NCBI RefSeq assembly: GCF_006345805.1
Contig: NC_043007.1
Span: forward strand, 65,906,001-65,970,000
Reading direction: 5' to 3'
DNA from: Octopus sinensis
Lineage: Eukaryota
DNA length: 64,000 nucleotides
Shown: piece after piece, positions 10,645 through 64,000 of the stretch
Layout of the letters: every line of letters begins with the position of its first letter
Position numbering within the stretch: position 1 is the stretch's first letter
Position numbers and translations under genes: made by a program
The notes under the pieces: generated by a model
Seen by the model: the letters and a program-made list of their open reading frames with translations, nothing else
The model's database searches: none
Told to the model about the DNA's origin: nothing

Positions 10645-11046
10645 AATGAGTTACTAGTTGATTCATCCTGTCCGTTTGATTCCATGATTGTAAAGAAAGA
10701 AGATGAAAAGCTAAAAAAATACAATGACTTATATTCGGAAATTGTAAGAATTTGGAGTAAGAAAGTTATACCTATAATATTTGATGCATTAGGAAATGTG
10801 AGTAAGGGTATAGACAAATTGTTGTAGGAGATTAGAATACAATGTCTTATAGAGCTTCTATAGAAAGTTTGCCTCTTAGAGAAAGGAAAAATTATCAGGA
10901 GGGTTTTAAGTACTTGAAGGTCTACTGAAAGCTTGTGTATATCTAAGGTTATAGGGAGTAACCTGCTACTCACATAAATTCTACAAAGAATAAGAACAGA
11001 CCTGAGTCAAATCACAAAGAACAACAATAATAATAATAATAATAAT
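10645..11046 (+). mobile_element. R4/Dong-clade LINE 3' end (restriction-like endonuclease C-terminus, 3'UTR, (TAA)n tail)
   Basis: 10645-10917 translates as VDSSCPFDSMIVKKEDEKLKKYNDLYSEIVRIWSKKVIPIIFDALGNV...ELL*KVCLLEKGKIIRRVLST*, the RLE C-terminal signature. Two internal stops. Confidence 0.85.
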
Positions 11047-11047
11047 A

Positions 11048-11443
11048 CATGGCTTCTGATCTTAACTGATTAGAAGTGCTATCATGTACATGCTTTATGC
11101 TGGTGTAAAAGATGGGTAGAGCAAATATTCTGCTCAATACCTCAGATTTGTTTGTCGTTAACCTGTTGAACGTGTTCCTAAGTGGCTGACGATATGTGCA
11201 TTTCTGATCACGATCAGAAGTAGTAGGGGAGCATCATAGCCATGTGTTGAGAGGGATTCTTTGGGGTTTGATTAATTCTCCTCTGGAGATACGGGTGTTT
11301 TGTTCATCAGCCTTAACAACTTTTGATTCAGACCTTTTGAGCGGGATTGTCTCAACCAGAAGAAAATTCTAACTGGGCTCCCACCTGCAAGTAAATATTG
11401 TACACATATAGTTGTGATGCATGTATCTGATGTGCCCTTATCG
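11048..11443 (+). mobile_element. ~525-bp (TAA)n-associated interspersed repeat, partial copy
   Basis: Aligns to the complete copy at 22282-22806. Confidence 0.85.
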
Positions 11444-14465: not shown

Positions 14466-15261
14466 GGTGCAATCATTATTAATAATGCAGAATATTAGTC
14501 TAAAGTAGGAACAATACATGTTTCTTATTACTTTTAATCCAATATCATCCTGGTTAAAGTCCTTTTACACCCATTTTAGAATTTTTTCTTGATTTTATTT
14601 TCTTACTGTAACTTTTATAGCTTGTTCTTTGATATATCTTTAAACAAGGACCTCGTCTCAAAGACTGATCTGTCTCTTCAGGGCCTTACTATATTTGAAC
14701 CCCTATAAAGTTGTTGTCACTCTACAAGGCACCTACATCTGAAATGCGCACAAATATTCTGGATCGTACCAGGCAAGGGCCACTCGACTGAGTAGCATCA
14801 AATGACTAACAAACACCCTGCCGGCCTGCCTTTCTATCGCTTCTAAAATGGCTTTTGTTCCTCGGATCTGACTATCTCTTACCTACTCTATTCAGATACC
14901 CCGACTCCTCGTCTCTCTCTCTCTCCCTTATCACCCTTGTTGTGTACTCCTGTGACACCGTACAAACCCCTATGGCTAGTCCTACTACAGAATATTTAAC
15001 TCTGGAATCTTTTCTCTGCCTGTATTTTTTGCGCCAGTGTTGACCTACATCCATTTAAATGGAACATTTATAGTATCAAGTTCATCGATTTTAGAGGACC
15101 TACAAAGATTCAGGTCACTAGCTCCTTCTAAATTCAGCAAGTGACAAAATACAAAACATAAAAAGGCTGACTGATTTCGGCAGAATTCCTTGTTACTGAG
15201 ATATACTTGCATAGCAAGTGACCTGATCTGAGATCGTGTGCTGGAACGAAAACAATCGCAG

Positions 15262-15396
15262 CGGGGAAGGTGTTTATAAGCCATTTAAAGAACATACAAA
15301 AACCGTTAGATTCACTTTAACATTTAAATTTTATTTGTTAAAATATTTTCGTCGCTTTGCGACCGCGACCTGTTCACTGACAAAATTCCGTGCAGC
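15262..15396 (-). repeat. ~135-bp dispersed repeat shared with 61678-61812 (hammerhead-bearing)
   Basis: Reverse complement aligns to 61678-61812 over its whole length. Confidence 0.85.
15334..15384 (-). ncRNA. Minimal type-I hammerhead fold, G3-C8 core variant (copy 1)
   Basis: Minus strand reads TTTGTCA-GTGAACA-G-GTCGC-ggtcgcaaa-GCGAC-GAAA-ATATT-T-TAACAAA. One stem I mismatch. Confidence 0.7.
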
Positions 15397-16194
15397 ACGA
15401 AATTTTCCTTGCCATTGTTACTTTTTTTTCAATTACATTTTTCTGGTGCCGTAAACTCTGACAGTTTTTAACTTCTGTTTGAAAATAAACAGCGTATACT
15501 AATGACTTCTTTTTTTTTCTACCTCCAAACTTTGTTCCTCTTTCATGTTTCTTATTTAATTGGAAATCGAGTACCTATGTGTTATTTTGTTTGTTTTTCT
15601 CTTGCATAATACACATTACCACATAACTGATACTCTACTGTAAATCTTTGTTTCTGTTTTCCAAGTCCATGAAGACAAACAATATTTTTTACTATTTTGC
15701 TTTTGTTTATTTTTTTCATTGTCTCCAAGGCACTGCTTATCAGTTTTTGAAAGGATATGTAAGCAAGTGTTAATTTGCCAAAATGAAGATGCATTACTCT
15801 ATTGTGAATATACACGCACGATTTCTTGAATCATTATCAAGAATACATCTCTGTTGATTGTATTCTTCGTTGTTCTTCTTGCACGATGCACACTTATAGT
15901 TACGGACACTTTGGTATGCATAGTTAAACTTAATGTGAAGTGATCTAGCAATATAAAGGTCCTGTTGTGAAGCGTGGTGTTATGCTTATAAAAGAAGAAT
16001 GCGATCTGTTGTTTGTATGTATGTATGTATGTATGTATGTATGTATGTATGTATGTATGTATGTATGTATGTATGTATGTATGCAAGTATGTATGTATGA
16101 ATGCTTGTATGCATTTATGTATGTATGTATGCATGTATGTATACATGTATGCATGTATGCATGTACTAATGTATGTATGCATGCATGTTATGTC

Positions 16195-17848: not shown

Positions 17849-18883
17849 TTGTGTGTGTATATGTATGTTGTATGTATATACATGCATGTATCTGTGGATG
17901 TGGATGTATGCATCTGTATGTGTATATATACATATATATCTTTATATATATATATATATATATATGCATGTGTGTGCGCATGTGTGTTAGTATATATATT
18001 ATATATGCATGTGGCATGTGTATACTTATGCATGCTTGAGTGCGTGTGAAAAATTTCGCTAATTTATATCAGCAACATATTTTTTTGTCATATTTGCATT
18101 TTATTCCGTCCTTCCTTTTTCTGGCGAGTCTTGTAATTTTAATGATTTTTCCCAGAAAGTTTTATACCATTCTCTTTTTAATCCATTTAGCTATAATTAT
18201 ATTTCTTTTCCTCCTCATGGAGAATTATAACAGAGAGTTACATCCATATCTTTTGAAGTCATTGGTATTGCCTTGTTATTTCGATGAAAACAATTAAATA
18301 AAATTACCTAAATACAGGCTTGCGATACTCTATCTTACTATACTAATGAGCTTTACCATTCTCAGTTTATTTTTGGTATTTTAGTGAGAAATTTTCTTTT
18401 AAAATATTCGTTTGACTGAAAAAATTTATTAGCTGAAGTTTTCCTAAGATATTTGCACTGGGAAAGTTCAAATTTAATTTGATAAACTAATTTTAGAATC
18501 ATTATGTTACGGTGCTTTTAAATAAGCAGTTCCTTTTTATAAACTGATACATCCAGTATGTCTAAAGAATTTAGTTAAATAGCAGTGGTGTGTTCTTTCC
18601 TGAAAGGTTCCAGTTCTTTTTTTTTTTCTCTCGTTGTTCTTTGTCTTAATTTTTAAGAAGAAAGTGTTCCAGTCTTTCAGAAAACTTTACTTAAGAATTT
18701 CTTATCTATTTGTGTACAAAGCAGATATAAGCATCACTCTGTACTTTGGTGATTACTGCCTTCTACAGTAAATGACCAAAGTGCTGTGAATAAAATTTGG
18801 CAGTAGGAAATTGTATAGGGACACGTCAAATTATTCTCAAGTAGCGGGCATCAATGCATTGATTTTAATAGCATTATTATTAT

Positions 18884-19000
18884 TGAGTGAGAGGGCAGCA
18901 CATGCCGTCAAAGTGACAGTGGGGTAAAATATACGAAGCCCAATATACCCATCATGACTATCCGTCTGATAAGGGTACACTAGACACATGCATCACGACC
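18884..19000 (-). mobile_element. (TAA)n-associated repeat, 3'-end fragment
   Basis: (ATT)n-GAGTGAGAGGGCAGCACATGCC is the reverse complement of the 3' end of 22282-22806. Confidence 0.8.
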
Positions 19001-19815: not shown

Positions 19816-20649
19816 CTATCTATCTATCTTTCTATCTGAGTCAAGTTACTGGTAGCATAAATTGGAAAATACTCTTACACGCATCCACCATTCCAGCGTT
19901 ATAAAAAACCTTGCCAACATTTTGCAAATTATTCTAACTACATTCTAACATTCATGGACTAAATTCCTACAAAAGGTTTTCTAATATAACTTCAGAAACT
20001 CAACCACATACACAAATATAAAAAAAATGTATACCTGTTTGCAAGCAAACTGAAATATAATTTTCTTTTTCTCATTCTTCATTTTTCTTTTACTAATTAA
20101 ATCATATTTTATTTTTGTTCTCATTTTTATACATGAATATATATACACATATTCTATATCGGACCCACTTTAGAATATATCTAGAAGAGAATTTTGAAGA
20201 AAATATATAAACAAACAACAAACAAATTTTGTACATAACACCTATGTACTAATCAAATTGCTTATAAAACAATGAACACCTAGAGAGAAATATATAAACA
20301 GACAACCTTTACCCAAATACTTTTATGAACATCAAGCACAAGAGAAACAGTTTTCTATACTAATAAATCCACGACACGTCTGATTAATAACCCCACCCTG
20401 ACACATAAAAACAAGAACTACCCTAAATAATAACAAGTAAAAAAAATAACCAGTCAAAAACTTTCTACCTGCTTACATTCTTTAGTGAAAAAGTCGACAC
20501 ACCCAGTTACTGAAGACTTAAATACTGGACTTTGTACCTTTGACATTTATATTGTCAAAGCAAAGGAATTAAATCCAATAATACCCCCACCCACCAAAAA
20601 AACAGCAAAAATACTGTCACGCCCTGTGTCTACCAAAAAATAAAGAGAA

Positions 20650-21021
20650 ACACCGAAATACTTCTCCTTGTACTCCTCGATCTTCTCCTTCCGTGAGTGC
20701 TGTTCTTATAATACCGAGGACTTGGTTGTGACGCCATGCATATTTGTCCAGTGCCAGCCTGCAGTTTGACAGGACATGTCTCATCGTCGCTTTCTCTCCG
20801 CATTTAAATTCATCAGCCGTTTGTATGTTCCACCGGATTAAGTTGACCGGTGATGGCAAAATGTCGAAGGTGAACTTGATCAGGAAAGATGTTCTTGCTT
20901 GTTCCAAAGCCCAAAGTTATTTCCATGTGATTTTACGACTGACCACATATTCCTCCCATCGTAAGCACTGTCTCTGTTGACTACACTGCACCAAATGCAT
21001 ATTTCATCTTTCTTTTTCCTC
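20650..21021 (-). mobile_element. HERO-type (R2 superfamily) LINE fragment, thumb to CCHC knuckle
   Basis: HLVQCSQQRQCLRWEEYVVSRKITWK*LWALEQARTSFLIKFTFDILPSPVNLIRW...CGEKATMRHVLSNCRLALDKYAWRHNQVL. Confidence 0.75.
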
Positions 21022-21743
21022 TTTGAGACCATTCCGCCCCAAATCATTATAAATGGTATTATTTTAACCTTATATCCATTCATCTGTTCAATTTCTTTTG
21101 CAAGTCTATTATACTTTTGTATTTTTGTCATTTCGACTTCGTTCAGTTTTTTTGTCGATGTTATTCCAATTTCGATTATTATTGTTTCTTCTCTTTCGTG
21201 GGCAAATATTGTAATATCGAGTTTATTGTTTTCTATATGGTTTGGTGTTATTACTGAGCTATCTACTAAAATCTTAATCTTTTCAGTTGTTGTTACCATA
21301 TCTTTTTGCACGTTTCTGATTTTCTGGGTTTTTTATGTGTTATATTGCTGTAGTAGGTCCGCAAAGATTATCTTGGTTATCTCACCACGTCTCTCTTTAT
21401 ATTTCGTGCATGCTATTTTTCCACATTGTATTGCCATATGTTCGATATTGCCGTTGTGTTTTACAATATCTGCATGCCTTTTTTCTTCCATAGTAGTTGT
21501 TTCTGTCTTGTAAATACTGTATAATATATTTATGTCTCATTGAGTATTTGCTTTGTTTTATAAATTTCAATGATTCTCTTTTTGATACTGCTCCCTCAAT
21601 CAGGTGTTTAAAGTATTCACCGTATATTACTTTGTGAGGTTGTTCCCTAATTATTTTTTCTCCTTCGTATTTTTTGTATTCATTGACATTATTGATATTA
21701 TTTTTTATGCATTCATTTTTTTATTTCCATAATATCGTAACCC

Positions 21744-21788: not shown

Positions 21789-22217
21789 GAGCATCCCCTG
21801 TGATCATAATATCTCAGCGAAAGAGTTTGACAAGCTCAGAAAATATAAAGACCTACTCATTGAAATTGAGAAAATGTGGCATCTCAAGGCGGGTTACAAT
21901 ACCAGTGATCGTAGAGCACTAGGAATGATCAAGAAGGGAACCGAAAATTATATGAGAATGATCCCTGGCTTACCATCCCTGCAAGAAGTGCAAAAGATTG
22001 TCTTAACTGGTACATCACACGTATGAGAAGAGCATTGTCGATGTGAGAACTGTTGCTGCTCATGTATTTTAATTTAACTTTAAAAAAAAAAAAAAATGAA
22101 CGAACTACTGAGTTTGGTTTAATGGCCTACCAATATTACACTATGAGTTTCTTTGCCCTAGGAGTCGGGAAGACACTCGGCAAGAAATGGAAGAAAATTT
22201 GAAAGAAGAAAAAAAAA

Positions 22218-22250
<33 letters not shown>

Positions 22251-22280
22251 TAATAATAAAAATAATAATAACAATAATAA
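21789..22280 (+). mobile_element. R4/Dong-clade LINE 3' end flanked by (TAA)n on both sides
   Basis: IPCDHNISAKEFDKLRKYKDLLIEIEKMWHLKA / TIPVIV...LGMIKKGTENYMRMIPGLPSLQEVQKIVLTGTSHV..RALSM* (stop 22044-22046), then 3'UTR and (TAA)n at 22219-22280. Confidence 0.85.
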
Positions 22281-22281
22281 T

Positions 22282-22805
22282 GGCTCTCATGGCTTCTGAT
22301 CTTAACTGATTGGAAGTGTTATGTACATTGTTTTGTCTTGGTATAAAGATGGGCTACAGCAAAATATTCTGCTCAATACCACAGATTGCTTGTCAGTTGT
22401 TTGACCTTAACCAGTTGAGCATGTCCCTTAGTGGCTGACGATATGTGCATCTCTGATCACGAGCAGAAGTAGTGGGGGAGCATCATAGCCTGTGTGAGAA
22501 GGATTCTTTGGGGTTTGAATAATTCATCTCTGGAAACATGGGTGTTTCGTTCAACGTCCTTAAACAACCCTTATTCAGGGACCTTTTGAGCGGGATGGGT
22601 TACTCGATCTGAAGAAAATTCTAATGGCTCCACCTGCAAGGTCATGTGCTGCTTATCTTGATATGAGATCACCATGTGGAGCACATATGGTTGTGATGCA
22701 TGTGCCTGGTGTACCCTTATCAGACGGGTAGTCATGATGGGTTATACTGGGCTTCGTATATTTTACCCCAGTGTCACTTTGATGGCATGCTCTGCTCGCT
22801 CACTC

Positions 22806-22806
<1 letters not shown>
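22282..22806 (+). mobile_element. ~525-bp (TAA)n-associated non-coding repeat, complete copy
   Basis: GGCTCTCATGGCTTCTGATC...CTCGCTCACTCA-(ATA)n. Six copies in the window; no ORF and no tRNA head. Confidence 0.85.
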
Positions 22807-22840
<34 letters not shown>

Positions 22841-23177
22841 TAACAATAATGATAATTTCACCTATGGTGAAATTTACCTTGCTGGAATATACCGTGGTGG
22901 AATTTATCCGTCACCGTATGTATGTATGTATGTATGTATGTATGTAGATATATATATATATAGAGAGAGAGATAGAGAGAGAGAGATAGAGAGAGGGAGA
23001 GGGAGAGAGAGAGATACATATATATATTTATATACGTATGTATGTGTATGTATTATAAATATATGTGTGTTTGTATGTGTATGTGTGTGTATAAGTATAT
23101 ACATAGTTCACAGATGAAACCCAAATATTCTCCCTATAACAGGCACGTCGTGTTTAAGAGATTTAAACTTGTGCGGG

Positions 23178-37708: not shown

Positions 37709-38107
37709 TTCAAATTTCGGCACAAGGCAGCAAGATCGGGGGACGGAGTAAATCAATTATATTGACCCTAGTGCTCAACTGGCACTTAATTTATCGACTC
37801 CAAAAGGATGAAACGAAAAGTCGACCTCGGCGGAATTTGAACTTAGAACGTAAATACGGACGAAATGCCGCTAAGCATTAATAATGCTTAATGCAAAAAG
37901 GCACAAGGCCTGAAATTTGGTGGGAAGGGACTGGTCGATTACGCCGACCACAGTGTTTCACTGGTACTTAATTTAACGACCACGAAATGAGGAAAGGTGA
38001 AGTCGACCTTGGCGAAATTTGAACTCAGGACGTAATAACAGACGAAATACCGCTAATTATTTTGTCCGGCATGCTAACGATTCTGCCGGCTCACCGTCCT
38101 AATAATG

Positions 38108-38139
<32 letters not shown>

Positions 38140-38295
38140 CCCTACTATTATAGGCCTGAATTTTGTGGGGAGGGATTAAGTCAATTACATCGACCCCCAG
38201 TATTCAACTGCTTAGTTTATCAACACCGAAAGGATGAAAGGCAAGGCCGAACCTCGACTGAATTTGAATGCAGAACGTAGCGACGGGCGAAATAG
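37709..38295 (-). mobile_element. Three tandem SINE family B copies (37709-37880, 37900-38098, 38150-38295)
   Basis: Each contains GATGAAA..AAGTCGACCTCGGCGGAATTTGAACT.AGAACGTA, the reverse complement of family B. Confidence 0.85.
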
Positions 38296-38302
38296 ACATA
38301 AT

Positions 38303-40776
38303 AGCTAATTCAGAGTAGATCGGAAGAGATTCTGCAAAGAAATAAATGGAGAGTGTACAGATGAAAAGTTGATACCAGATAACATTGAAAGTCAAAGTTT
38401 TTGGAGTGACATCTGGAGCAAAGTCAAGGAGCATAAGAAGGATGCTGAATGGTTGCAAGGGCTGAAACAAACAGTAGTCTGTCCACAACAAGCAGAACTA
38501 GTCATTTCAGTAAGGGAAGTGAAGGAAATCAGCAAAAGAAATGGGCAACTGGAAGGCCCCGGGACCAGATGGAGTTCAAAGCTACTGGATCAAAAGGTTT
38601 GGAGAATGTCATGCACGAGTAGCTGCACAGCTCCCCACCTTGTTAAATGCCGACCAAGTAACATCAGAGTAGTTGACAATCTGTAGGACAGTGCCGTGCT
38701 TGAAAAACATAGAAAAAAGACAATAAAGTTGACAATTACAGGCCGATATCCTGTTTGCTACTTATGTGGAAATTATTGAATGGAATAGTCGCCGTGTCAA
38801 TGTACGGACATCTGGAAAAAAATGGAGTCCTGCCATATGAGCAGAAGGGTTTCAAGCGAAAGTGCAGAGGTACCAAGGATCAACTCCTGGTAGACAAATC
38901 TGTATATAGAGACTGCAAGAGGAGGCAAACTAACAGCCATGTCATGGAACGACTATCGTAAGGCGTACGATATGATCCCACATTCTTGGATTAGGCAATG
39001 TATGAACCTATTTGGTATTGCATCGAATGTTGACCGATTGCTTGGGAAAAGTATGGCAAAGAGGAGGACGAAATTAATAGCTTATGGAAGAATTTTAGGG
39101 ACAACAGAAATCAGGAGAGGCATCTTCCAAGGGGACTACCTGTTCCCACTGATATTTGTACTGTGCATGATATCACTAACATTGATTTTGAGGAAATCAA
39201 AGGCTGGATATGTACTCAAAAGCCGCCAACAAAAAGTCAACCACCTGTTATTCATGGATGAGCTCAAACTTTATGGTAAAGATGAATCCTGAGTCAGTTC
39301 CCTCGTTGATACGGTGTATACTTTCAGTGCTGATATCAGAATGGAGATCGAACTGAAAAAAGTGTGGTGTGTTAGTATTGAAGAGAGGCAAAATTAAATG
39401 TATGAACAGGCTAGTGATACTGTCAGGGGAGGTTATAAAACAGATAGAAGAGACGGGTCATAACTACATGGGGATATTGGAAATGGATAAATTGATGGAG
39501 AAAGAAATGACAGAAAAATTTACGTTGGAGTACTTGTGCAGACTGAAACTGATCCTTAAGTCCAAATTAAACGGACGAGATAAGATTGAAGCAACCAACA
39601 CCTGGGCGGTGTCACTCCTTATATATGGAGCAGGGGTAATCGCATGGACAGTAGAACTAAACAGCTTAGAGAGGAAGACAAGGAAGTTGCTAACTAGATA
39701 TGGTTACTCCACTCAAAAAGAGACACAGACAGACTGTATGTTCCAAGAAAAAGAGGGAGAAGAGGACTGGATGCGAACACAGCATTAGAGCAGAAGAAAA
39801 CAGCATTGAATGATATATAAAAATGCCACAGAACCAATATTATTGGAAGTAAGAAGGTCAAGCTTGTGTTGGATGGAAGATTGCAAAGATAAAGCACTGT
39901 ACACTGTACAAGAATAGCTCAAACTGAAAATAGGTGGATAAAGAAAAGAATGCATGGACAATTTCATAGGGATGTTGAAGATAAGACAGGCAGAGAAAGA
40001 AGATGGCTATGGATGACTAAAAGTGGTTTAAAACCAGAAACGGAGGCTGCCCAAGAGCAAGCACTTGGAACCAATTACATCAAATACACAGTAGACAACA
40101 TCAGAAAGTGATAAGTGCAGAATTTGTGGACAAAATGGTGAAACCATATGGCATATTACCAGTCAATGTACGCCACTAGCCCAGAAAGAATAGAGTAGAT
40201 GTCATGACAATTTAGCAAGGATTGTCCATTGCACACTTTGCAACAAGTATGGACTTGATACAGCAAAAACGTGGTACGAGCATAAATCCGAAGGCATTAT
40301 CAAAAATGATAATGTAAAGATCCTATGGGATTTTATGATTCAGTGCGATCATGAGATAGAGAATAGGAAACCAGACATAGTGTTGAGAAAGAAAGCAAAC
40401 GATACTGGGTAATAGAATAACATGTCCAGCTGACAAAAAGGTATGTGGTAAGGAAGAAAGAAAAGTCAATAGATATAACAGTTTAGCTTGGGAGGTTAAG
40501 CAGTTGTAGTCGCTAAAAAAGGTGGTGGTAATACCAATAATTGTCGGAGTCCTGAGAACAGTGAATAAAAATCTTGAGAAGTACACGGGACAAATATGGG
40601 CTGCCATAAGGGTGGTGCACGTGCAGAAAACATCACTACTTGGAACCGCTCGAATACTCCGGATGATGCTCGAAAAATAAGAGGTGTTATCTTAGTTCAC
40701 TGGTAGTAAACAGCATGCACCGTAGTACATCTCCAGCGTTAGAAGCTGTGCAAAGACAATAAATAATAATAATAAT
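38303..40776 (+). mobile_element. 5'-truncated R4/Dong-clade LINE (RT, CCHC knuckle, RLE endonuclease, 3'UTR, (TAA)n tail), pseudogenised
   Basis: Motifs in order across frames: [118 protein letters not shown] (40678-40680). Many stops and frameshifts. Confidence 0.93.
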
Positions 40777-41799: not shown

Positions 41800-42360
41800 G
41801 AGGTTATTTTATTTTAATTCTCTCGTAGGAAGGCTTAGCATGTTAGACGTGTCCTGTCTTGCCTTCGACAGCTGATGAAGGGGATTTTTCCTTGTGTAGC
41901 ATGTCCTGTACCTTGTCTTTCCGTTTTACATTATGTTTTTCCCGTTTTCGTTCTCGTCCTGTTCCACGTCTCTGTCCTTCTGTTGTAACAAAATGGCTTT
42001 TCCGTTTTCGTTTCTGTTGAGTTCTACGTCTTTTTGTGGTTTCCTGTACGTATATATATTTATATATGCATGTATATATACATGTAGATGTCGGTACGTA
42101 CATATATGTTTGTATGTATGCATATATTTTATCCTTGAATGATTTTTAAAAATCACTTATTGTCGTTTTGTTAACCATGTAGGCAGTCATCGAAATTTTT
42201 GTTTGTCTTGTTGCCGAGAGAGGCTCCCTTTCTTTCCTGATGAGAAGATTGCATCATACACCCTTTATTCCTTTGGAATGAAACCATGTGGTCTTCGAAA
42301 CATATGTTGGGAGTAAAGGAATTTTGTTAACATCTTCGTTCGACTCCATTCTTTCATTTA
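41800..42360 (+). mobile_element. Probable Penelope-like terminal-repeat-derived non-coding element
   Basis: T-rich non-coding block with CTGATGA at 41872 and a full hammerhead at 42232-42313. The GACA(G/A)CTGATGAAGGG start recurs at 55706. Confidence 0.5.
42232..42313 (+). ncRNA. Minimal type-I hammerhead ribozyme with canonical core
   Basis: CTGATGA (42237-42243); 11-bp stem II (42244-54/42286-96, including GU pairs); GAAA (42297-42300); stem III palindrome ACATATGT; cleavage triplet GUU (42306-08); 5-bp stem I CTTTC/GGGAG with two GU pairs. Confidence 0.8.
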
Positions 42361-42393
42361 TTCATATATATATATACATACATATATATATAA

Positions 42394-42609
42394 GGGCGGC
42401 GAGCTGGGAGAATGGTTAGAATGCCGGGCGAAATGCTTAGCGTCTGCCGTTATGTTCTGGGTTCAAATTCCGCCGAGGTGGACTTTCATTTTTTCGGAGT
42501 CGGTTAAATAAGTACCAGTTACGCACTGGGCTCGATGTAATCGATTTAATCCATTTGTCTGTCCTTGTTTGTCCCCTCTGTTTAGCCCCCTGAGAGCAAT
42601 AAAGAAATA
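42394..42609 (+). mobile_element. SINE family B, near full length
   Basis: GGCGGCGAGCTGG.AGAA.GGTTAG...GGTTCAAATTCCGCCGAGG, ending AATAAAGAAATA. Confidence 0.85.
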
Positions 42610-47956: not shown

Positions 47957-48597
47957 GGCACAAGGCCAGCAACTTCGAAGAAGAGGGAAATCGATTATAT
48001 CGAACCCAGAGCTTAACTGGTATTTAACTTATCGATTCCGAAAGGATGAAAGGCAAAGTCAACTTGGCGAAATTCGAACTCAAAACGTGCCGACGGACGA
48101 AATACCACTAAGTATTTTTACTGGGTATGCTAATGATTCTTTTCTACTGAAGGCACAAGGACCAAAATTTTCGGGGAGGGGGCCAGTCGATTAAATTGAC
48201 CCCAGTGCGCAACTGATATTTGATTTATCGACCCCCGAAAGGATGAAAGGCAAAATCAACCTCGGCGGAATTTGAACTCGGAACGTAAAGACAGACGAAA
48301 TAACGCGACACATTTCGTCCGGCGTGCTAACGATTCTGCCAGCTCGCTGCATTTGCTTCTGTTAATATTACCTTCACCGCCAAGGCGGCGAACTGGCAGA
48401 ATCGTCAGCAACGCCGGGGAAAATGCATAGCGGCATTTCATTCATCTTTATGTTCTGAGTTCAAATTCTGCCGAGGTCGACTTTACCTTTTATCCTTTCG
48501 AGGTCGATAAGATAAGTACTGGTTGATCACTGGGGTCGATGTAGTCGACTTAATCCCTCCCGCGAACTTGTCGGCTTTGTACCAATATTTGAAATAA
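47957..48597. mobile_element. SINE family B cluster: 47957-48140 (-), 48152-48350 (-), 48384-48597 (+)
   Basis: All match family B; the last two are inverted and ~33 bp apart. Confidence 0.85.
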
Positions 48598-52330: not shown

Positions 52331-52380
52331 AAAATTGTTATTATTATTTTATTATTTTATTATTATTATTATTATATTAT

Positions 52381-52903
52381 TGAGTGAGAGAGCAGTACAT
52401 GCCCTCAAAGTGACACTAGGGTAAAATATACGAAGCCTAGTAAACACATCTGATAAGGGTGCACCAGGAACATGCATCACAACCATATGTGTACGGCATG
52501 GTGATCTCATATCAAGATAAACAGCACATGACCTTGCAGGTGGAGCCCAGTTAGCTTCATATTAAGTAGTCCATTCTGCTCAAAAGGTCCCTGAGTAAGA
52601 GCTGTTTAAAGATGTTGAAAGAAATACTTATGTTTCCAAAGCTGAATTATCCAAACCCCAAATAATTCCTCTCAACTCAAGGCTATGATGCTCCCACACT
52701 ATTTCTGCTCGTGATTAGAGATGCCCATATCGTCAGCCACTAAGGGACATGCTCAACTGGTTGTGGTCAAACAAGTGACAAGCAAATCTGTGGTATTGAA
52801 CAGAATATTTGCTGTAGCCCATCTTTTATATCAAGACAAAACCATGTACATGATAACACTTCCAGTCAGTTAAGATCAGAAGCCATGAGAGCCACTGCTT
52901 GGT
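52381..52903 (-). mobile_element. ~525-bp (TAA)n-associated repeat, complete copy
   Basis: Reverse complement of 22282-22806, with (ATT)n on both sides. Confidence 0.85.
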
Positions 52904-52911
52904 ATTATTAA

Positions 52912-52970
<59 letters not shown>

Positions 52971-52991
52971 TATTACTATTATTATATTACT

Positions 52992-55029: not shown

Positions 55030-55094
<65 letters not shown>

Positions 55095-55108
55095 TTATTT
55101 ATCATTTT

Positions 55109-55543
55109 GCATGCCATCAAAATGACACTGGGATAAAATATACGAAGCCCAGTATACCCATCATGACTACCCGTCTGATAAGGGTACACTAGGCACATGC
55201 ATCACAACCATATGTGCGCGACATGGTGATCTCATATCAAGATAAACAGCACATGACCTTGCAGGTGGGTCCCAGTTAGAATTTTCTTCTGGTCGGGTAA
55301 CCCATCCCGCTCAAAAGGTCCCTGAATAAGGATTGTTTAAGGATATTGAACGAAACACCCATGTTTCCAGAGGTGAATCATTCAAACCCCAAAGAATCCC
55401 TCTCAACACATGGCTATGATGCTCCCCCACTACTTCTGCTCGTGATCAGAGATGCACATATCGTCAGCCACTAAGGGACATGCTCAACTGGTTACGGTCA
55501 AACAACTGACAAGCAAATCTGTGGTATTGAGCAGAATATTTGC
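55109..55543 (-). mobile_element. (TAA)n-associated repeat, partial
   Basis: Reverse complement of 22282-22806, preceded by (ATT)n. Confidence 0.85.
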
Positions 55544-60282: not shown

Positions 60283-60515
60283 CTTATTTCTTTATTACAC
60301 ACAAGGGGCTAAACATAGAGGGGACAAACATGGACAGACAAAAGTATTAAGTCGATTACATCGACCCCAGTGCGTAACTGGTACTTAATTTATCTACCCT
60401 GAAAGGATGAAAGGCAAAGTCGATCTCGGCGGAATTTGAACTCAGAACGTAAAGGCAGACGAAATACCGCTAAGCATTTCTCCCAGCATGCTAAAGTTTC
60501 TGCCAGTTCGATCGG
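60283..60515 (-). mobile_element. SINE family B, near full length
   Basis: Reverse complement of 42394-42609. Confidence 0.85.
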
Positions 60516-61687
60516 TTGCTCTGGCCTGGACGGGGTGGATTCCACCAGGTTTAAAATGTCAAAGAATGTTTCGACGATGGCCCTATAATTGTACCATGTG
60601 CTAAGCCTTTCAAAAACAGAGTACCAGGTATATTGCAAACCCTGTTTTACTTATCTGACCTCGATAAATCTTCTTAGAATACATATTCTTTTGAAAGACA
60701 GAAAAAGCTATGAAAAAGAAAAAAGCTCGTGACTTTTTCTTATGACATATTATCTGAAATATTTGTCTCGAGATGTATTACTTATGGAACGATATAGGAG
60801 ACATAATCGGGATCTTCTATATATAATGGAGAAAGCTGCTTATTAATTAGGTGTGTTACAGTTACTAAATTAAAGCAATTATTAAAGGCTCGACCGTCTG
60901 GAGATTTGTTTTATAAATTTATATTCCAAGAAATTTCCTGAAATTTCGATTTCTGAAGTTTATTGAATATTTGAACTACAAGCTTTCCCCAAATTTAAAT
61001 ATTCGTTGCATTTACTGCGGAGTAGATTTTAATATTGCAGACGAAATTTTCCGTTTTCATTAGTAACAATCTCTGTCTCTCTCTCTTTCTCTCTCTCTCC
61101 CTTTCTCTCTCTCTCTCTCTCTCTCTCACCCACACACACACACACACTCTTTCTCTTCTATTTTTATTAATGTTAATTTAATACATATTTCAATGCTTTT
61201 AATTCACTATTTTCAAAACGCACAGTTTATTCTATATACGTAATGTATGAACATTTATTGAATGAATGCTATTAGACAAAATAGCTGCATAACTTTGACA
61301 CGAGACATAATTTCAAAAATAATAACAGTTTCTGGAATTTGTTAAATGAATATTTTTGATAAAAATGAAAATTTTTTAATAGACCGGTATGATTTAAAAA
61401 AAATTAGGAAGTGGTATGGCTGTTTGGAACGCTATACGCCTTACAATAATAGCTATGTGATCGCTGCTATTTCTAGCATGCTAAACGTGGTTGGGTTACC
61501 TTGAATTTTTTTTTAAATTAAAGACATATTACAACTACGATAAATTACTGAAAGAAATATTTACTAAGCAAGTGAGATTTTTATAAATTGAAGTTTTCAG
61601 GAAAATTTACTTTCTGAACTTCCTTTAATTATTGAATATTTCAAGTTCACAAATTTAAATACTCGGTACGAAGATACAGCACGGAGT

Positions 61688-61738
61688 TTTGTCAGTGAAC
61701 AGGTCGCGGTTTCAAAGCGACGAAAATATTTTGACAAA
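61688..61738 (+). ncRNA. Minimal type-I hammerhead fold, G3-C8 core variant (copy 2, all helices intact)
   Basis: TTTGTCA-GTGAACA-G-GTCGC-ggtttcaaa-GCGAC-GAAA-ATATT-T-TGACAAA: 7-bp stem I, 5-bp stem II, palindromic stem III AATATT, UUU cleavage triplet. Confidence 0.8.
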
Positions 61739-61860
61739 TTAAATTTAAATGTTGAAGTGAATCTAACGGTTTTTGTGTGTTTCTTAAATGGCTTATAAAC
61801 ACCTTCCACGCTGCAATTGTTTATTATTATTATTATGATGATAATGATGATGATTTTCTT

Positions 61861-62266
61861 GCTTGTCAGTTCTTTGACCTGAATCAACTAAGCATTCCTA
61901 CGGTAGCTGACAATATGTGCATCTCTGATCACAAGCAGAAGTAGTGGGGGAGCATCGTAACCATGTGTTGAGAGAAATTCTTTGCGGTTTGAATGATTCA
62001 CCTCTAGAAACATGGGTGTTTCGTTCAGCATCCTTAAATAACCCTTATTCAAGGACCTTTTGAGTGGGATGGACTACTCGACCTAAAGAAAATTCTAACT
62101 GGGCCCAACCTGCAAGGTTATGTGCTGCTTATCTTGACATAGAGTCACCATGTCGTGCACATCATTACTAACCGCCTGATAAGGCGGGTAGTTATGATGG
62201 GGGTATTGGGCTTCCTATAGTTGTACCCGAGGGTCACGTTGATGGCATGCATTGCTCTATCACTCA
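61861..62266 (+). mobile_element. (TAA)n-associated repeat, 5'-truncated
   Basis: Aligns to 22390-22806 and is followed by (TAA)n(TAG)n. Confidence 0.85.
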
Positions 62267-62285
62267 GTAATAATAATAATAATGA

Positions 62286-62341
<56 letters not shown>

Positions 62342-62509: not shown

Positions 62510-63310
62510 ATGCAGTTCTAATAGAGAAAAAAAATTCAAACTAGAGTCAATAAAGGAACTCCACAGGTTCAGGATTATCCTGACCACCAAAGGTACGAGC
62601 CATCTCTCATGGTCTCCAATCTACAGGCATAAGCTTAGAGTAGGGCCATTCATTCCGACTATTTTTACCAGTCACCCATCTCTTCACAAGTTTATCGGTA
62701 GGCAGTCCTTCACACTCCACTCTCACTTACCTTTCCAAGTGGGACTTAAAAAAAAATCATTTAAGGCTTCACTGAAGAGGAAGATGTCTTTCACAATCCT
62801 TTCAGCTATGTCTACCACAAAACCTCTTTCACCATCGCCACTAGAGTGAGGGATACCGTACGCCCCGACTTTTTAAATGTAGGTAGTGGGGCGATCCAAA
62901 AGATGAATTCAGCCAATAGTCGTATTCGATAACAGCTATTCTCATAACTCTACAAGTAAGCAATCCTTGGACACGGGTGCGTGCTCGACGGTTTCATCGC
63001 ACTGAGCTCTTCTCGAATAGTCCCACTCGGCAGTACTCCGTGCCTGTAGAGTTTATCTCTAACTGGTAGTGATCCTTGGAAGCACTGGTAGACCGAGGAC
63101 TTCTAGAAGTTAACCATGGTAGTACTGAGAGCGATAGTCCTCCGAAATAGACCAGCGAGTTCATCGTCGATATATTGAGCTTTCTCTGATAACGCAATTG
63201 CTCTTAACCACTACTAGATATCTATACATTGCTAACATAGAACTTCTGCCGACCGAATAACCCGACTAGTAGAGGGCAGTGAGCGCCTGACGGTATTCCA
63301 GATGCCAGAC
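62510..63310 (-). mobile_element. L1/Tx1-clade LINE ORF2 C-terminus (zf-RVT region), degenerate
   Basis: QCFQGSLPVRDKLYRHG, CDETVEHA, LVAMVKEVLW*T*LKGL, FFKSHLERKVRVE, across frameshifts. Confidence 0.7.
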
Positions 63311-64000
63311 GTCTAAAGATCTTTGTGAAGACCGTATGTAAAATGAATGGCCTAGTTTCAACAGTGCAGATATTCAGCATGGATATCGGAATGGAATTTG
63401 TGACTAAAATGTGTGGTATGCTTATAATACACAAAGACAATGTAGTGTCGTATAATGGTATAGTACTACCCAACGATGAGAAAGGCAAGGGCATTGGGTC
63501 TGATGGATATAAGTATCTGGGTATTTTGGAATATTAAAAAAATCAAAGAAAGTGAAATGAAGGAAAGCTTTAAGCAAGAATTTCTCAGAAGGACCAAATT
63601 AATTATAGGAAGTAGACTCAATAGAAAAAACAAGATCAGTTCAATGAACACATGGGCTGTTTCTTTAATGCGATATGGCGCAAGTGTTGTTAGGGGGATA
63701 AAGAACGAGCTTGGGGAAATGAACAGGAAAACCAGGAAAGTGATGACAATTAACAAGGAACTACACACGAAAAGGGACATTGACAAGTTGTATGTGCTTA
63801 GGAACAAGGGAGGAAGAGGCCTCATAGGATGCGAAATCTGTGATGTCAACGAGAAGAACAGTCTGGGATAGTACATCAAATAACAGAGTGAATCCTTGCT
63901 TGCCGCTGTTAGAATTAGCATTACAAGACCTACCGAAAATGTGATGCACCCACAAATAATTAAGAAACAAGATGAAGAAAGAGTAAACAATAAGAAAATG
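63311..64000 (+). mobile_element. R4/Dong-clade LINE RT fragment (from the catalytic-motif region onward), runs off the window
   Basis: LKIF...DIGMEF...GYKYLGILE / MNTWAVSLMRYGA / DIDKLYVLRNKGGRGL, homologous to 39260-39800. Confidence 0.88.

What the first reader, a model, noticed from the sequence alone, without database searches (positions are those of the whole stretch)
61688..61738. Hammerhead ribozyme family with a natural G3-C8 compensatory core (GUGAACA instead of CUGANGA)
Seen in sequence: perfect type-I hammerhead geometry, with a 7-bp stem I (TTTGTCA/TGACAAA), G-U-G-A-A-C-A, one extra G, a 5-bp stem II (GTCGC/GCGAC), GAAA, palindromic stem III AATATT and a UH site (predicted cleavage after 61731). 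Exactly two canonical core positions differ, 3 and 8, and they are swapped. The second copy 46 kb away (15334-15384, minus) has the same GUGAACA despite other differences, so this is the family state and not decay. Established: C3-G8 is a tertiary Watson-Crick pair in the active hammerhead, and engineered G3-C8 swaps rescue activity. Inference: this is a dispersed, potentially active ribozyme family that standard CUGANGA motif searches would miss. I have not verified whether it is already catalogued.
Basis: partly seen in the sequence, partly recalled or inferred. Interest (0 to 1): 0.92.

Follow-up and report, generated by a model that had tools for sequence, protein, structure and literature searches.

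The report
Hammerhead-like motif with swapped core pair
A 144-base repeat, present twice in this repeat-rich animal-type genome window, carries a motif that matches the small dimer-dependent hammerhead ribozymes of animal retroelements, except that the core pair C3-G8 is swapped to G3-C8; this is a modest new variant whose activity is untested.

Summary
A second copy lies at 15334-15384 (-), inside a 144-bp repeat that is 92% identical between the two sites.

It is not a chance match. A descriptor allowing all four Watson-Crick 3-8 pairs gives 0.013 hits per 64-kb window in 5,361 random windows, and none as good as this one.

- the extra G after A9
- the loop-less palindromic stem III

G10.1-C11.1 is present too. 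A canonical-core CUGAUGA motif of the same style sits at 42227-42318.

So this is most likely a genuine hammerhead-lineage motif with a compensated G3-C8 core. Natural U3-A8 is documented. I found no report of natural G3-C8.

The weak points:
- There are only two copies, so "family state" rests on little.
- There is no covariation, and copy B has a broken stem I.
- Both copies are solitary, so helix III has no partner.
- Rfam models miss the motif.
- Engineered G3-C8 gives only partial rescue.
- No further copies could be retrieved from any collection.

Verdict: partly supported; a new variant of a known kind, of moderate interest.

The parts
61679..61822 (+). Copy A of the 144-bp dispersed repeat unit that carries the motif
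   Evidence: BLAST of the unit against the window: 92.4% identity over 144 nt to 15393-15250, and flanks unrelated.
61688..61694 (+). Stem I, 5' strand (UUUGUCA)
   Evidence: Pairs with 61732-61738. This is the lowest-energy fold of the 51-mer and also of the 144-mer.
61695..61701 (+). Core strand G3-U4-G5-A6-A7-C8-A9 (canonical is CUGANGA)
   Evidence: Sequence read directly. Positions 3 and 8 are swapped but still complementary.
61702..61702 (+). Unpaired G between A9 and G10.1
   Evidence: A conserved nucleotide at this position is a stated hallmark of PLE min-HHRs (PMC4209133).
61703..61721 (+). Stem II (GUCGC/GCGAC, with G10.1-C11.1) and its 9-nt loop GGUUUCAAA
   Evidence: Lowest-energy fold. 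G10.1-C11.1 occurred in only 2 of 72 random hits.
61722..61725 (+). G12-A13-A14-A15.1
61725..61730 (+). Palindrome AAUAUU: A15.1, the AUAU 'tetraloop' and U16.1. As helix III it can form only between two copies. It is part of a 10-nt palindrome AAAAUAUUUU (61723-61732).
   Evidence: self-duplex of the GAAAAUAUUUU segment that contains this palindrome -4.6 kcal/mol. Amphibian type-I hammerheads are described the same way: one base pair capped by a palindromic tetraloop (PMC7229834).
61731..61731 (+). U17. The predicted scissile bond lies between 61731 and 61732.
   Evidence: Inferred from hammerhead numbering. Not tested.
61732..61738 (+). Stem I, 3' strand (UGACAAA)
15250..15393 (-). Copy B of the 144-bp unit. 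The motif is at 15334-15384. It has the same G3/C8 core, a C.A mismatch in stem I and a changed loop II.
   Evidence: A possible 6-bp target-site duplication TTTCGT lies near its ends, which is weak evidence.

Best explanation
The 144-bp unit is a short dispersed retroelement-type repeat. It is most likely a non-autonomous relative, or a terminal-repeat fragment, of a Penelope-like element (PLE).

Its 5' end carries a minimal type-I hammerhead of the metazoan kind. Helix I is open. Helix II has G10.1-C11.1, preceded by one unpaired nucleotide. Helix III is reduced to A15.1-U16.1 plus a palindrome.

The tertiary C3-G8 Watson-Crick pair of the catalytic core has been replaced by G3-C8. This double change is best explained by selection for the pair in the master element, so the ribozyme fold mattered in that lineage.

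As in its known relatives, the motif cannot cleave as a monomer. Two copies, in tandem or in trans, would have to pair through AAUAUU to build helix III. A protein might also be needed. Cleavage would then fall after U17 (61731).

The two loci in this window are solitary and copy B is damaged. They are probably inert copies, not working ribozymes.

Shown: the sequence anatomy, the non-randomness and the match to published hallmarks. Inferred: descent from a PLE-type hammerhead, selection on the 3-8 pair, the dimer mechanism and any activity.
For: - Anatomy is read directly from the sequence. The lowest-energy fold of the 51-mer is stem I plus stem II (z = -2.3).
- Not chance: 0.013 relaxed hits per window in 5,361 random windows. 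None of the 72 hits had stem I >=7 together with stem II >=5, 2 had G10.1-C11.1, and 6 had a palindrome of at least 4 nt. There were no comparable hits in the reversed window.
These are a nucleotide between 9 and 10.1, G10.1-C11.1, and palindromic 15.2-16.2 with loop 3. The same paper says most such motifs occur as dispersed single copies and work as dimers (PMC4209133).
- Natural compensation at 3-8 has a precedent in U3-A8 (PMC3088659; PMC4209133).
- C3G/G8C partly restores cleavage in a PLE hammerhead (PMC11167929).
- The same window holds a canonical-core motif of the same style at 42227-42318: CUGAUGA, an 11-bp stem II, GAAA, the palindrome CAUAUG, then UU. The expected number is 0.0007 per window. 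So this genome does carry such hammerheads.
- All other core positions are intact while exactly 3 and 8 are swapped. That is unlikely under neutral drift (inference).
Against: - There are only two copies, 92% identical, so the shared G3/C8 is one inherited state.
- There are no compensatory changes in stems I or II. The single stem difference breaks a pair in copy B.
- The motif does not diverge less than the rest of the unit: 3 differences in 51 nt versus 8 in 93 nt.
- No Rfam hammerhead model matches, even at E<=10.
- There is no tandem partner and no PLE reading frame nearby or anywhere in the window.
- Both copies start at the same base, which does not fit random 5' truncation of a PLE.
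- Helix I is 7 bp and helix II is 5 bp, the reverse of the proportions described for Schistosoma min-HHRs.
- U17 is an uncommon cleavage-site base (own knowledge).
- Published min-HHRs cleave weakly even as dimers, and hammerhead mutants do not impair PLE insertion in vitro.
- No further family members could be retrieved to test conservation.
Confidence: 0.55

Rival explanations
1. Dead relic. The motif descends from a canonical hammerhead, but the ribozyme was no longer under selection. The G3 and C8 changes are two fortuitous substitutions in an inactive pseudo-ribozyme that was then copied.
For: - Hammerhead cleavage is dispensable for PLE insertion in vitro (PMC11167929), and whole PLE clades lack hammerheads (PMC8557442). 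Loss of constraint is therefore plausible.
- Copy B shows ordinary decay.
- The motif diverges no less than the rest of the unit.
Against: Two transversions would have to land exactly on the two partners of one tertiary pair and restore complementarity. The other 11 core bases, G10.1-C11.1 and both stems would have to stay intact in copy A. Under drift this is improbable, of the order of 1e-3 or less (inference).
Confidence: 0.22
2. Chance look-alike. This is a nested pair of inverted repeats in an AT-rich transposon fragment that happens to carry UGA..A and GAAA in its internal loops.
For:
- The number of windows screened is unknown.
- No Rfam hit.
- The whole-unit fold is no better than shuffles (z = +0.46).
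Against: - Even with all four Watson-Crick 3-8 pairs allowed, the rate is 0.013 per window at minimal stem lengths. It was zero in 5,361 windows at the observed stem lengths.
- Multiplying in the independently observed hallmark frequencies gives roughly 1e-7 per window.
- The reversed-sequence control is empty.
- A canonical hammerhead of the same style is present in the same window.
Confidence: 0.08
3. The stem I and stem II three-way fold serves another purpose in the element's RNA. It might be a recognition structure for a reverse transcriptase or a promoter-proximal element, with no cleavage at all.
For: - The motif sits 9 nt from the unit's defined 5' end.
- A type-I hammerhead at that position would cut itself off the downstream RNA, so cleaved RNA could not pass the motif on.
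Against: This does not explain why 11 of 13 hammerhead core bases, G10.1-C11.1 and a palindromic helix III are all present. It is compatible with, rather than opposed to, hammerhead ancestry.
Confidence: 0.15

Closest known systems
Minimal hammerheads (min-HHRs) of metazoan Penelope-like elements (Cervera & de la Pena 2014, PMC4209133)
   Same: - Type-I topology
- One unpaired nucleotide between A9 and G10.1
- G10.1-C11.1
- Helix III reduced to a palindrome, so a dimer is required
- Mostly dispersed single copies
- Natural covariation at 3-8 (U3-A8) reported in a Schistosoma PLE
- Variants with a small palindromic helix III reported in flies, rotifers, shrimps and mosquitoes
   Different: - The core pair is G3-C8, which is not reported there.
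- Helix I is longer (7 bp) and helix II shorter (5 bp) than in the Schistosoma families.
- No PLE reading frame or terminal repeat could be linked to the unit.
- Both copies share one defined 5' end.
Classical metazoan type-I hammerheads of satellite DNA and non-LTR retrozymes (newt and axolotl, Schistosoma Sm-alpha; PMC7229834)
   Same: - Helix III of one base pair capped by a palindromic tetraloop
- Poor activity as a monomer
- Carried by short non-coding repeats
   Different: - Those elements are tandem arrays of 170-400 bp and have conserved loop 1-loop 2 contacts. Here the copies are solitary 144-bp units, with no tandem array and no evident loop 1.
- The core is canonical in those families.
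Engineered C3G/G8C double mutants (Martick & Scott 2006, as cited in PMC11167929; Anolis PLE hammerhead in PMC11167929; Kalweit & Hammann 2013, PMC3884650)
   Same: The same swapped tertiary pair. It shows that G3-C8 can support catalysis.
   Different: - Those are laboratory constructs.
- Rescue is partial and depends on context.
- In the Anolis PLE, cleavage also needed the element's protein.
Natural U3-A8 hammerheads (Perreault et al. 2011, PMC3088659)
   Same: Natural compensatory replacement of the C3-G8 pair.
   Different: That is a transition pair (C to U, G to A), reachable through a G.U intermediate. G3-C8 needs two transversions through a mismatched intermediate.

Membership tests
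Hammerhead ribozyme (type I) | Conserved core C3 U4 G5 A6 N7 G8 A9 / G12 A13 A14 / A15.1-U16.1 / H17 | tested here: inconclusive
   Eleven of 13 positions match. C3 and G8 are not met as bases. The Watson-Crick pair they form is kept as G3-C8.
Hammerhead ribozyme (type I) | Three helices around the core, with helix I open | tested here: inconclusive
   Stems I (7 bp) and II (5 bp) are the lowest-energy fold. Helix III cannot form within one molecule. It can form only as an AAUAUU self-duplex between two copies.
Hammerhead ribozyme (type I) | Match to the curated covariance models (Rfam hammerhead families) | tested here: not met
   No hit at the gathering score on the window, nor at E<=10 on 251 nt. 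The canonical-core motif at 42227-42318 is also missed, so the models are insensitive to this minimal architecture.
Hammerhead ribozyme (type I) | Covariation in the stems and conservation of the core across homologues | tested here: inconclusive
   Only two copies exist. The core is identical, there are no compensatory changes, and one change is disruptive. No further copies were found in any collection.
Hammerhead ribozyme (type I) | Site-specific self-cleavage after position 17 | not testable with these tools
   Needs in vitro transcription of dimer constructs or mapping of RNA ends.
PLE-type minimal hammerhead | Unpaired nucleotide between 9 and 10.1 | tested here: met
   G at 61702. The criterion is from PMC4209133.
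PLE-type minimal hammerhead | G10.1-C11.1 closing pair of helix II | tested here: met
   G61703-C61721. This pair was rare among random hits, 2 of 72.
PLE-type minimal hammerhead | Palindromic 15.2-16.2 and loop 3 | tested here: met
   AAUAUU at 61725-61730.
PLE-type minimal hammerhead | Location in the terminal repeat of an element encoding a telomerase-like reverse transcriptase and a GIY-YIG endonuclease | tested here: not met
   Flanks of the two copies are unrelated. No GIY-YIG signature or PLE-like frame was found in the window by a pattern scan or in the ORF lists. Most published min-HHRs are likewise solitary, so this does not exclude descent. The source genome could not be searched.
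Non-LTR retrozyme or hammerhead satellite | Tandem head-to-tail repeats of 170-400 bp, each with a type-I hammerhead | tested here: not met
   Two solitary copies lie 46 kb apart on opposite strands, with no tandem array.
tRNA-derived SINE with hammerhead (Sm-alpha type) | tRNA-related head with pol III boxes | tested here: not met
   ARAGORN finds nothing in the window. No convincing A and B box spacing by eye.

The most novel reading that the evidence does not exclude
The source genome, and perhaps its relatives, holds a sizeable family of hammerheads that are active as dimers or with protein help. Their catalytic core uses a natural G3-C8 pair. This would be a third natural solution for the 3-8 tertiary pair, reached by two transversions, and it is invisible to CUGANGA descriptors and to Rfam models.
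Probability: 0.3. Interest if true: 0.6.

Novelty: new variant of a known kind. Interest (0 to 1): 0.45.

Why it matters
If the G3-C8 core is conserved across a family and cleaves, it would be natural confirmation that the 3-8 interaction is selected as a base pair and not as specific bases. It would extend the known natural repertoire from C-G and U-A to G-C.

It would also show that descriptor and covariance-model surveys under-count retroelement hammerheads.

The claim is testable with four constructs: wild type, G3C, C8G and the double revertant. It does not change the picture of what hammerheads are or where they live. Dimer-dependent minimal hammerheads in animal retroelements, and compensation at 3-8, are both already known.

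Tried and rejected
**Searches for more copies (all negative)**
- A protein search with the reading frame that stays open across the unit on the minus strand found no candidate.
- A metagenome scan with TGTCASTGAASAGGTCGCGG gave 35 hits. Thirty-one are in G+C-rich contigs (>=54% G+C, read as bacterial), four lie at 42-50% G+C, and only a 29-nt chance match extends beyond the pattern.
- Viral and prokaryote genome scans with two different 20-22-mers found nothing.
- A search for the sequence strings in the paper library found only unrelated primers.

**Reaching the source genome through its LINE reverse transcriptase**
- The best homologue is only 62% identical. The fetched contigs that were scanned (ENA; L001, L037) lack the unit and any hammerhead hit; the Tara and Logan contigs (L038, L039) could not be scanned. 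The species appears not to be in the collections.

**Alternative identities for the unit, rejected**
- Coding exon: the minus-strand frame is open in both copies, but the 11 differences are mostly amino-acid-changing.
- tRNA or SINE head: no tRNA found.
- Any Rfam family: none.
- Tandem satellite: none.
- Segmental duplication: the flanks are unrelated.

**Other**
I replaced it with ORF lists and motif patterns, which show no PLE frame.
- Target-site duplications: a 6-bp TTTCGT candidate for copy B and none for copy A. This is not conclusive.
- Literature on natural G3-C8 hammerheads: nothing in the held library. The library is incomplete.

Full report
**1. What is there**

The sequence at 61688-61738 (+) reads UUUGUCA | GUGAACA | G | GUCGC-GGUUUCAAA-GCGAC | GAAA | AUAU | U | U | UGACAAA. 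In hammerhead numbering:
- Stem I is 7 bp.
- The core strand is G3 U4 G5 A6 A7 C8 A9, followed by one extra G.
- Stem II is 5 bp and is closed by G10.1-C11.1.
- G12 A13 A14 A15.1 follows, then AUAU, U16.1 and U17.
- Cleavage is predicted after 61731.

Eleven of the 13 conserved core bases are canonical. Positions 3 and 8 are swapped and remain complementary. The lowest-energy fold of the 51-mer is stem I plus stem II (-13.8 kcal/mol, z = -2.3). The same two stems form in the 144-nt context.

A second copy on the minus strand (15334-15384) has the same core. The shared repeat is 144 bp, not 135 (61679-61822 versus 15393-15250, 92.4% identity). There are only these two copies in the window, and their flanks are unrelated.

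Copy B differs inside the motif at three positions. Two are in loop II, where they create a GGUCGC-GGUCGC duplication that offers an alternative stem II. One is in stem I, where a C-G pair becomes C.A. The predicted fold of copy B loses the full stem I.

**2. Is it more than chance?**

I wrote a descriptor that is deliberately generous:
- any of the four Watson-Crick pairs at 3-8
- perfect stems of at least 4 bp
- an optional bulge after A9
- a loop II of 3-30 nt
- GAAA, then a self-complementary spacer of 0-8 nt, then U and H

In the window it finds copy A. In 5,361 first-order Markov windows of 64 kb, scanned on both strands, it finds 72 hits, or 0.013 per window. None has stem I of at least 7 bp together with stem II of at least 5 bp. 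Only 2 have G10.1-C11.1, and only 6 have a palindrome of 4 nt or more.

The reversed window serves as a control that keeps the repeats and simple sequence. It gives no hit with a Watson-Crick 3-8 pair and a palindrome.

The motif is therefore not a chance match, even allowing for a genome-wide screen. What remains unknown is how many windows the first stage read.

**3. What kind of hammerhead it resembles**

Both are published signatures.

Cervera and de la Pena (PMC4209133) describe 'min-HHRs' in the terminal repeats of Penelope-like retroelements (PLEs) across animals. They list the features that emerged without being part of their search:
- a highly conserved G10.1-C11.1
- a palindromic 15.2-16.2 and loop 3

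They also report that most copies are dispersed single motifs thought to be truncated elements. The motifs must pair as dimers to build helix III, and cleavage in vitro is weak. Variants with a small palindromic helix III occur in flies, rotifers, shrimps and mosquitoes.

The amphibian satellite and retrozyme hammerhead is described as one base pair capped by a palindromic tetraloop (PMC7229834). That is exactly A15.1-[AUAU]-U16.1 here. The palindrome extends to 10 nt (AAAAUAUUUU, 61723-61732; the GAAAAUAUUUU segment containing it self-duplexes at -4.6 kcal/mol).

This is the strongest argument that the motif is a true hammerhead descendant.

**4. Context in the window**

The window is eukaryotic and 33-40% G+C. 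It contains several kinds of repeats:
- Perfect microsatellites make up 11.3% of it.
- LINE reverse-transcriptase fragments are present.
- Several repeat families are present, some of them SINE-like by eye.

My own guess, untested, is a decapod crustacean such as a penaeid shrimp.

A relaxed scan turned up one more hammerhead-like motif with a fully canonical core at 42227-42318 (+). It has CUGAUGA, a stem II of about 11 bp closed by G10.1-C11.1, GAAA, the palindrome CAUAUG, then U and U, and a stem I of 7 pairs with one mismatch. The expected number for a canonical core plus a palindrome of at least 4 nt is 0.0007 per window.

This motif lies in a segment of about 230 bp between AT-rich, (TA)n-like simple-sequence tracts (42050-42130, 42359-42390). 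That recalls the (TA)n insertion preference reported for some PLE clades (PMC8557442). Rfam misses it too, so the lack of an Rfam hit for the G3-C8 motif says little about authenticity. Its lowest-energy fold is not the exact hammerhead fold, so it remains a candidate.

The window thus shows that this genome carries dimer-type hammerhead motifs. No PLE reading frame is present.

**5. The G3-C8 question**

The accessible literature establishes three things:
- C3-G8 is a base pair. Single C3G or G8C mutations kill activity and the double mutant partly restores it. This was recently shown in an Anolis PLE hammerhead that also needed the element's protein (PMC11167929).
- Natural covariation to U3-A8 exists (PMC3088659; PMC4209133).

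I found no report of a natural G3-C8 hammerhead. The library is incomplete, so this is absence of evidence.

Going from C-G to G-C needs two transversions through a mismatched intermediate. Finding exactly that swap with every other core base intact argues for selection on the pair in the master copy (inference).

The present data cannot show this directly. The two copies share the state by descent. There is no compensatory change in either stem, and the motif is no better conserved than the rest of the unit (3 differences in 51 nt versus 8 in 93 nt).

**6. Mechanism, and how far it is supported**

The most likely reading is that the unit is a short retroposed repeat related to PLE-type elements, with the hammerhead starting 9 nt from its 5' end. 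A monomer cannot form helix III. Cleavage after U17 would need two copies paired through AAUAUU, in tandem or in trans, and perhaps a protein.

Both loci here are solitary and copy B is damaged, so these two copies are probably inert.

Two points are unexplained:
- Both copies begin at the same base. That does not fit random 5' truncation and suggests a defined full-length element.
- A type-I hammerhead at the 5' end would cut itself away from the downstream RNA. Only uncleaved RNA could transmit the motif. This is consistent with the report that unprocessed RNA is the substrate for PLE insertion in vitro.

**7. What could not be done**

Every route to further family members failed. The routes tried were a peptide search across the unit, a metagenome scan, viral and prokaryote scans, and contigs reached through LINE homologues. 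The source species appears to be absent from the collections.

**8. Verdict**

This is very probably a genuine hammerhead-lineage motif of the known metazoan dimer-type class, with a swapped 3-8 pair that has not been reported in the literature I could search. It is a new variant of a known kind.

That the swap is a conserved family state, and that the motif cleaves, are open questions. Interest is moderate (0.45). The claim is cleanly testable, but compensation at 3-8 and minimal retroelement hammerheads are both established.

Noticed in passing
window 42227-42318 (+), within 42131-42362: A canonical-core type-I hammerhead-like motif: CUGAUGA at 42237-43, a stem II of about 11 bp with G10.1-C11.1, GAAA at 42297-300, the palindrome CAUAUG, U16.1 and U17, and predicted cleavage after 42308. 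It lies in a segment of about 230 bp between AT-rich, (TA)n-like simple-sequence tracts (42050-42130, 42359-42390). The expected number is 0.0007 per window. Rfam misses it, and its lowest-energy fold is not the exact hammerhead fold.
   Followed up: partly
window 61723-61732: AAAAUAUUUU is a perfect 10-nt palindrome spanning A13 to the first base of stem I. That is longer than the 6 nt needed for a dimeric helix III and could mis-pair core bases in a dimer.
   Followed up: partly
window 61679-61822 minus strand; 15227-15451 plus strand: One reading frame on the strand opposite the motif stays open across the whole unit in both copies. The 11 nucleotide differences are mostly amino-acid-changing, and no protein in the 5.8-billion-sequence collection shares words with it, so it is not coding.
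   Followed up: yes
window 22206-22858, 52332-52974, 55034-55543, 61859-62323, 11017-11391, 18865-19000: A repeat family of about 460-650 bp (75-92% identity between copies) is bordered by trinucleotide microsatellites, (AAT)n at several copies and (TAG)n at 62286-62341 at the copy beside unit A. One copy starts 36 bp after unit A, separated from it only by an ATT/ATG microsatellite. The identity of the family is unknown.
   Followed up: no
window 42395-42600, 60285-60510, 48185-48554, 37749-38294, 47988-48140: A SINE-like family whose head looks tRNA-derived by eye, with a B-box-like GGTTCAAATTCC. At 42395-42600 it is flanked by AT-rich, (TA)n-type simple-sequence runs. ARAGORN calls no tRNA.
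   Followed up: no
window 38309-40409 (+), 63283-63868 (+), 20620-21720 (-): Decayed LINE reverse-transcriptase and C-terminal fragments (Pfam RVT_1 in the homologues). The best database homologue is only 62% identical, which suggests the source species is not in the protein collection.
   Followed up: partly
whole window: 11.3% of the bases lie in perfect microsatellite runs of at least 12 bp: AT, AAT, AGAT, AC, ACAT, AAG and ACT. This is unusually high and fits my untested guess of a penaeid-shrimp-like genome.
   Followed up: partly
window 15398-15403 and 15246-15251 (copy B flanks): A possible 6-bp direct repeat TTTCGT lies near both ends of copy B. Copy A has no counterpart. It could be a target-site duplication or chance.
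   Followed up: partly
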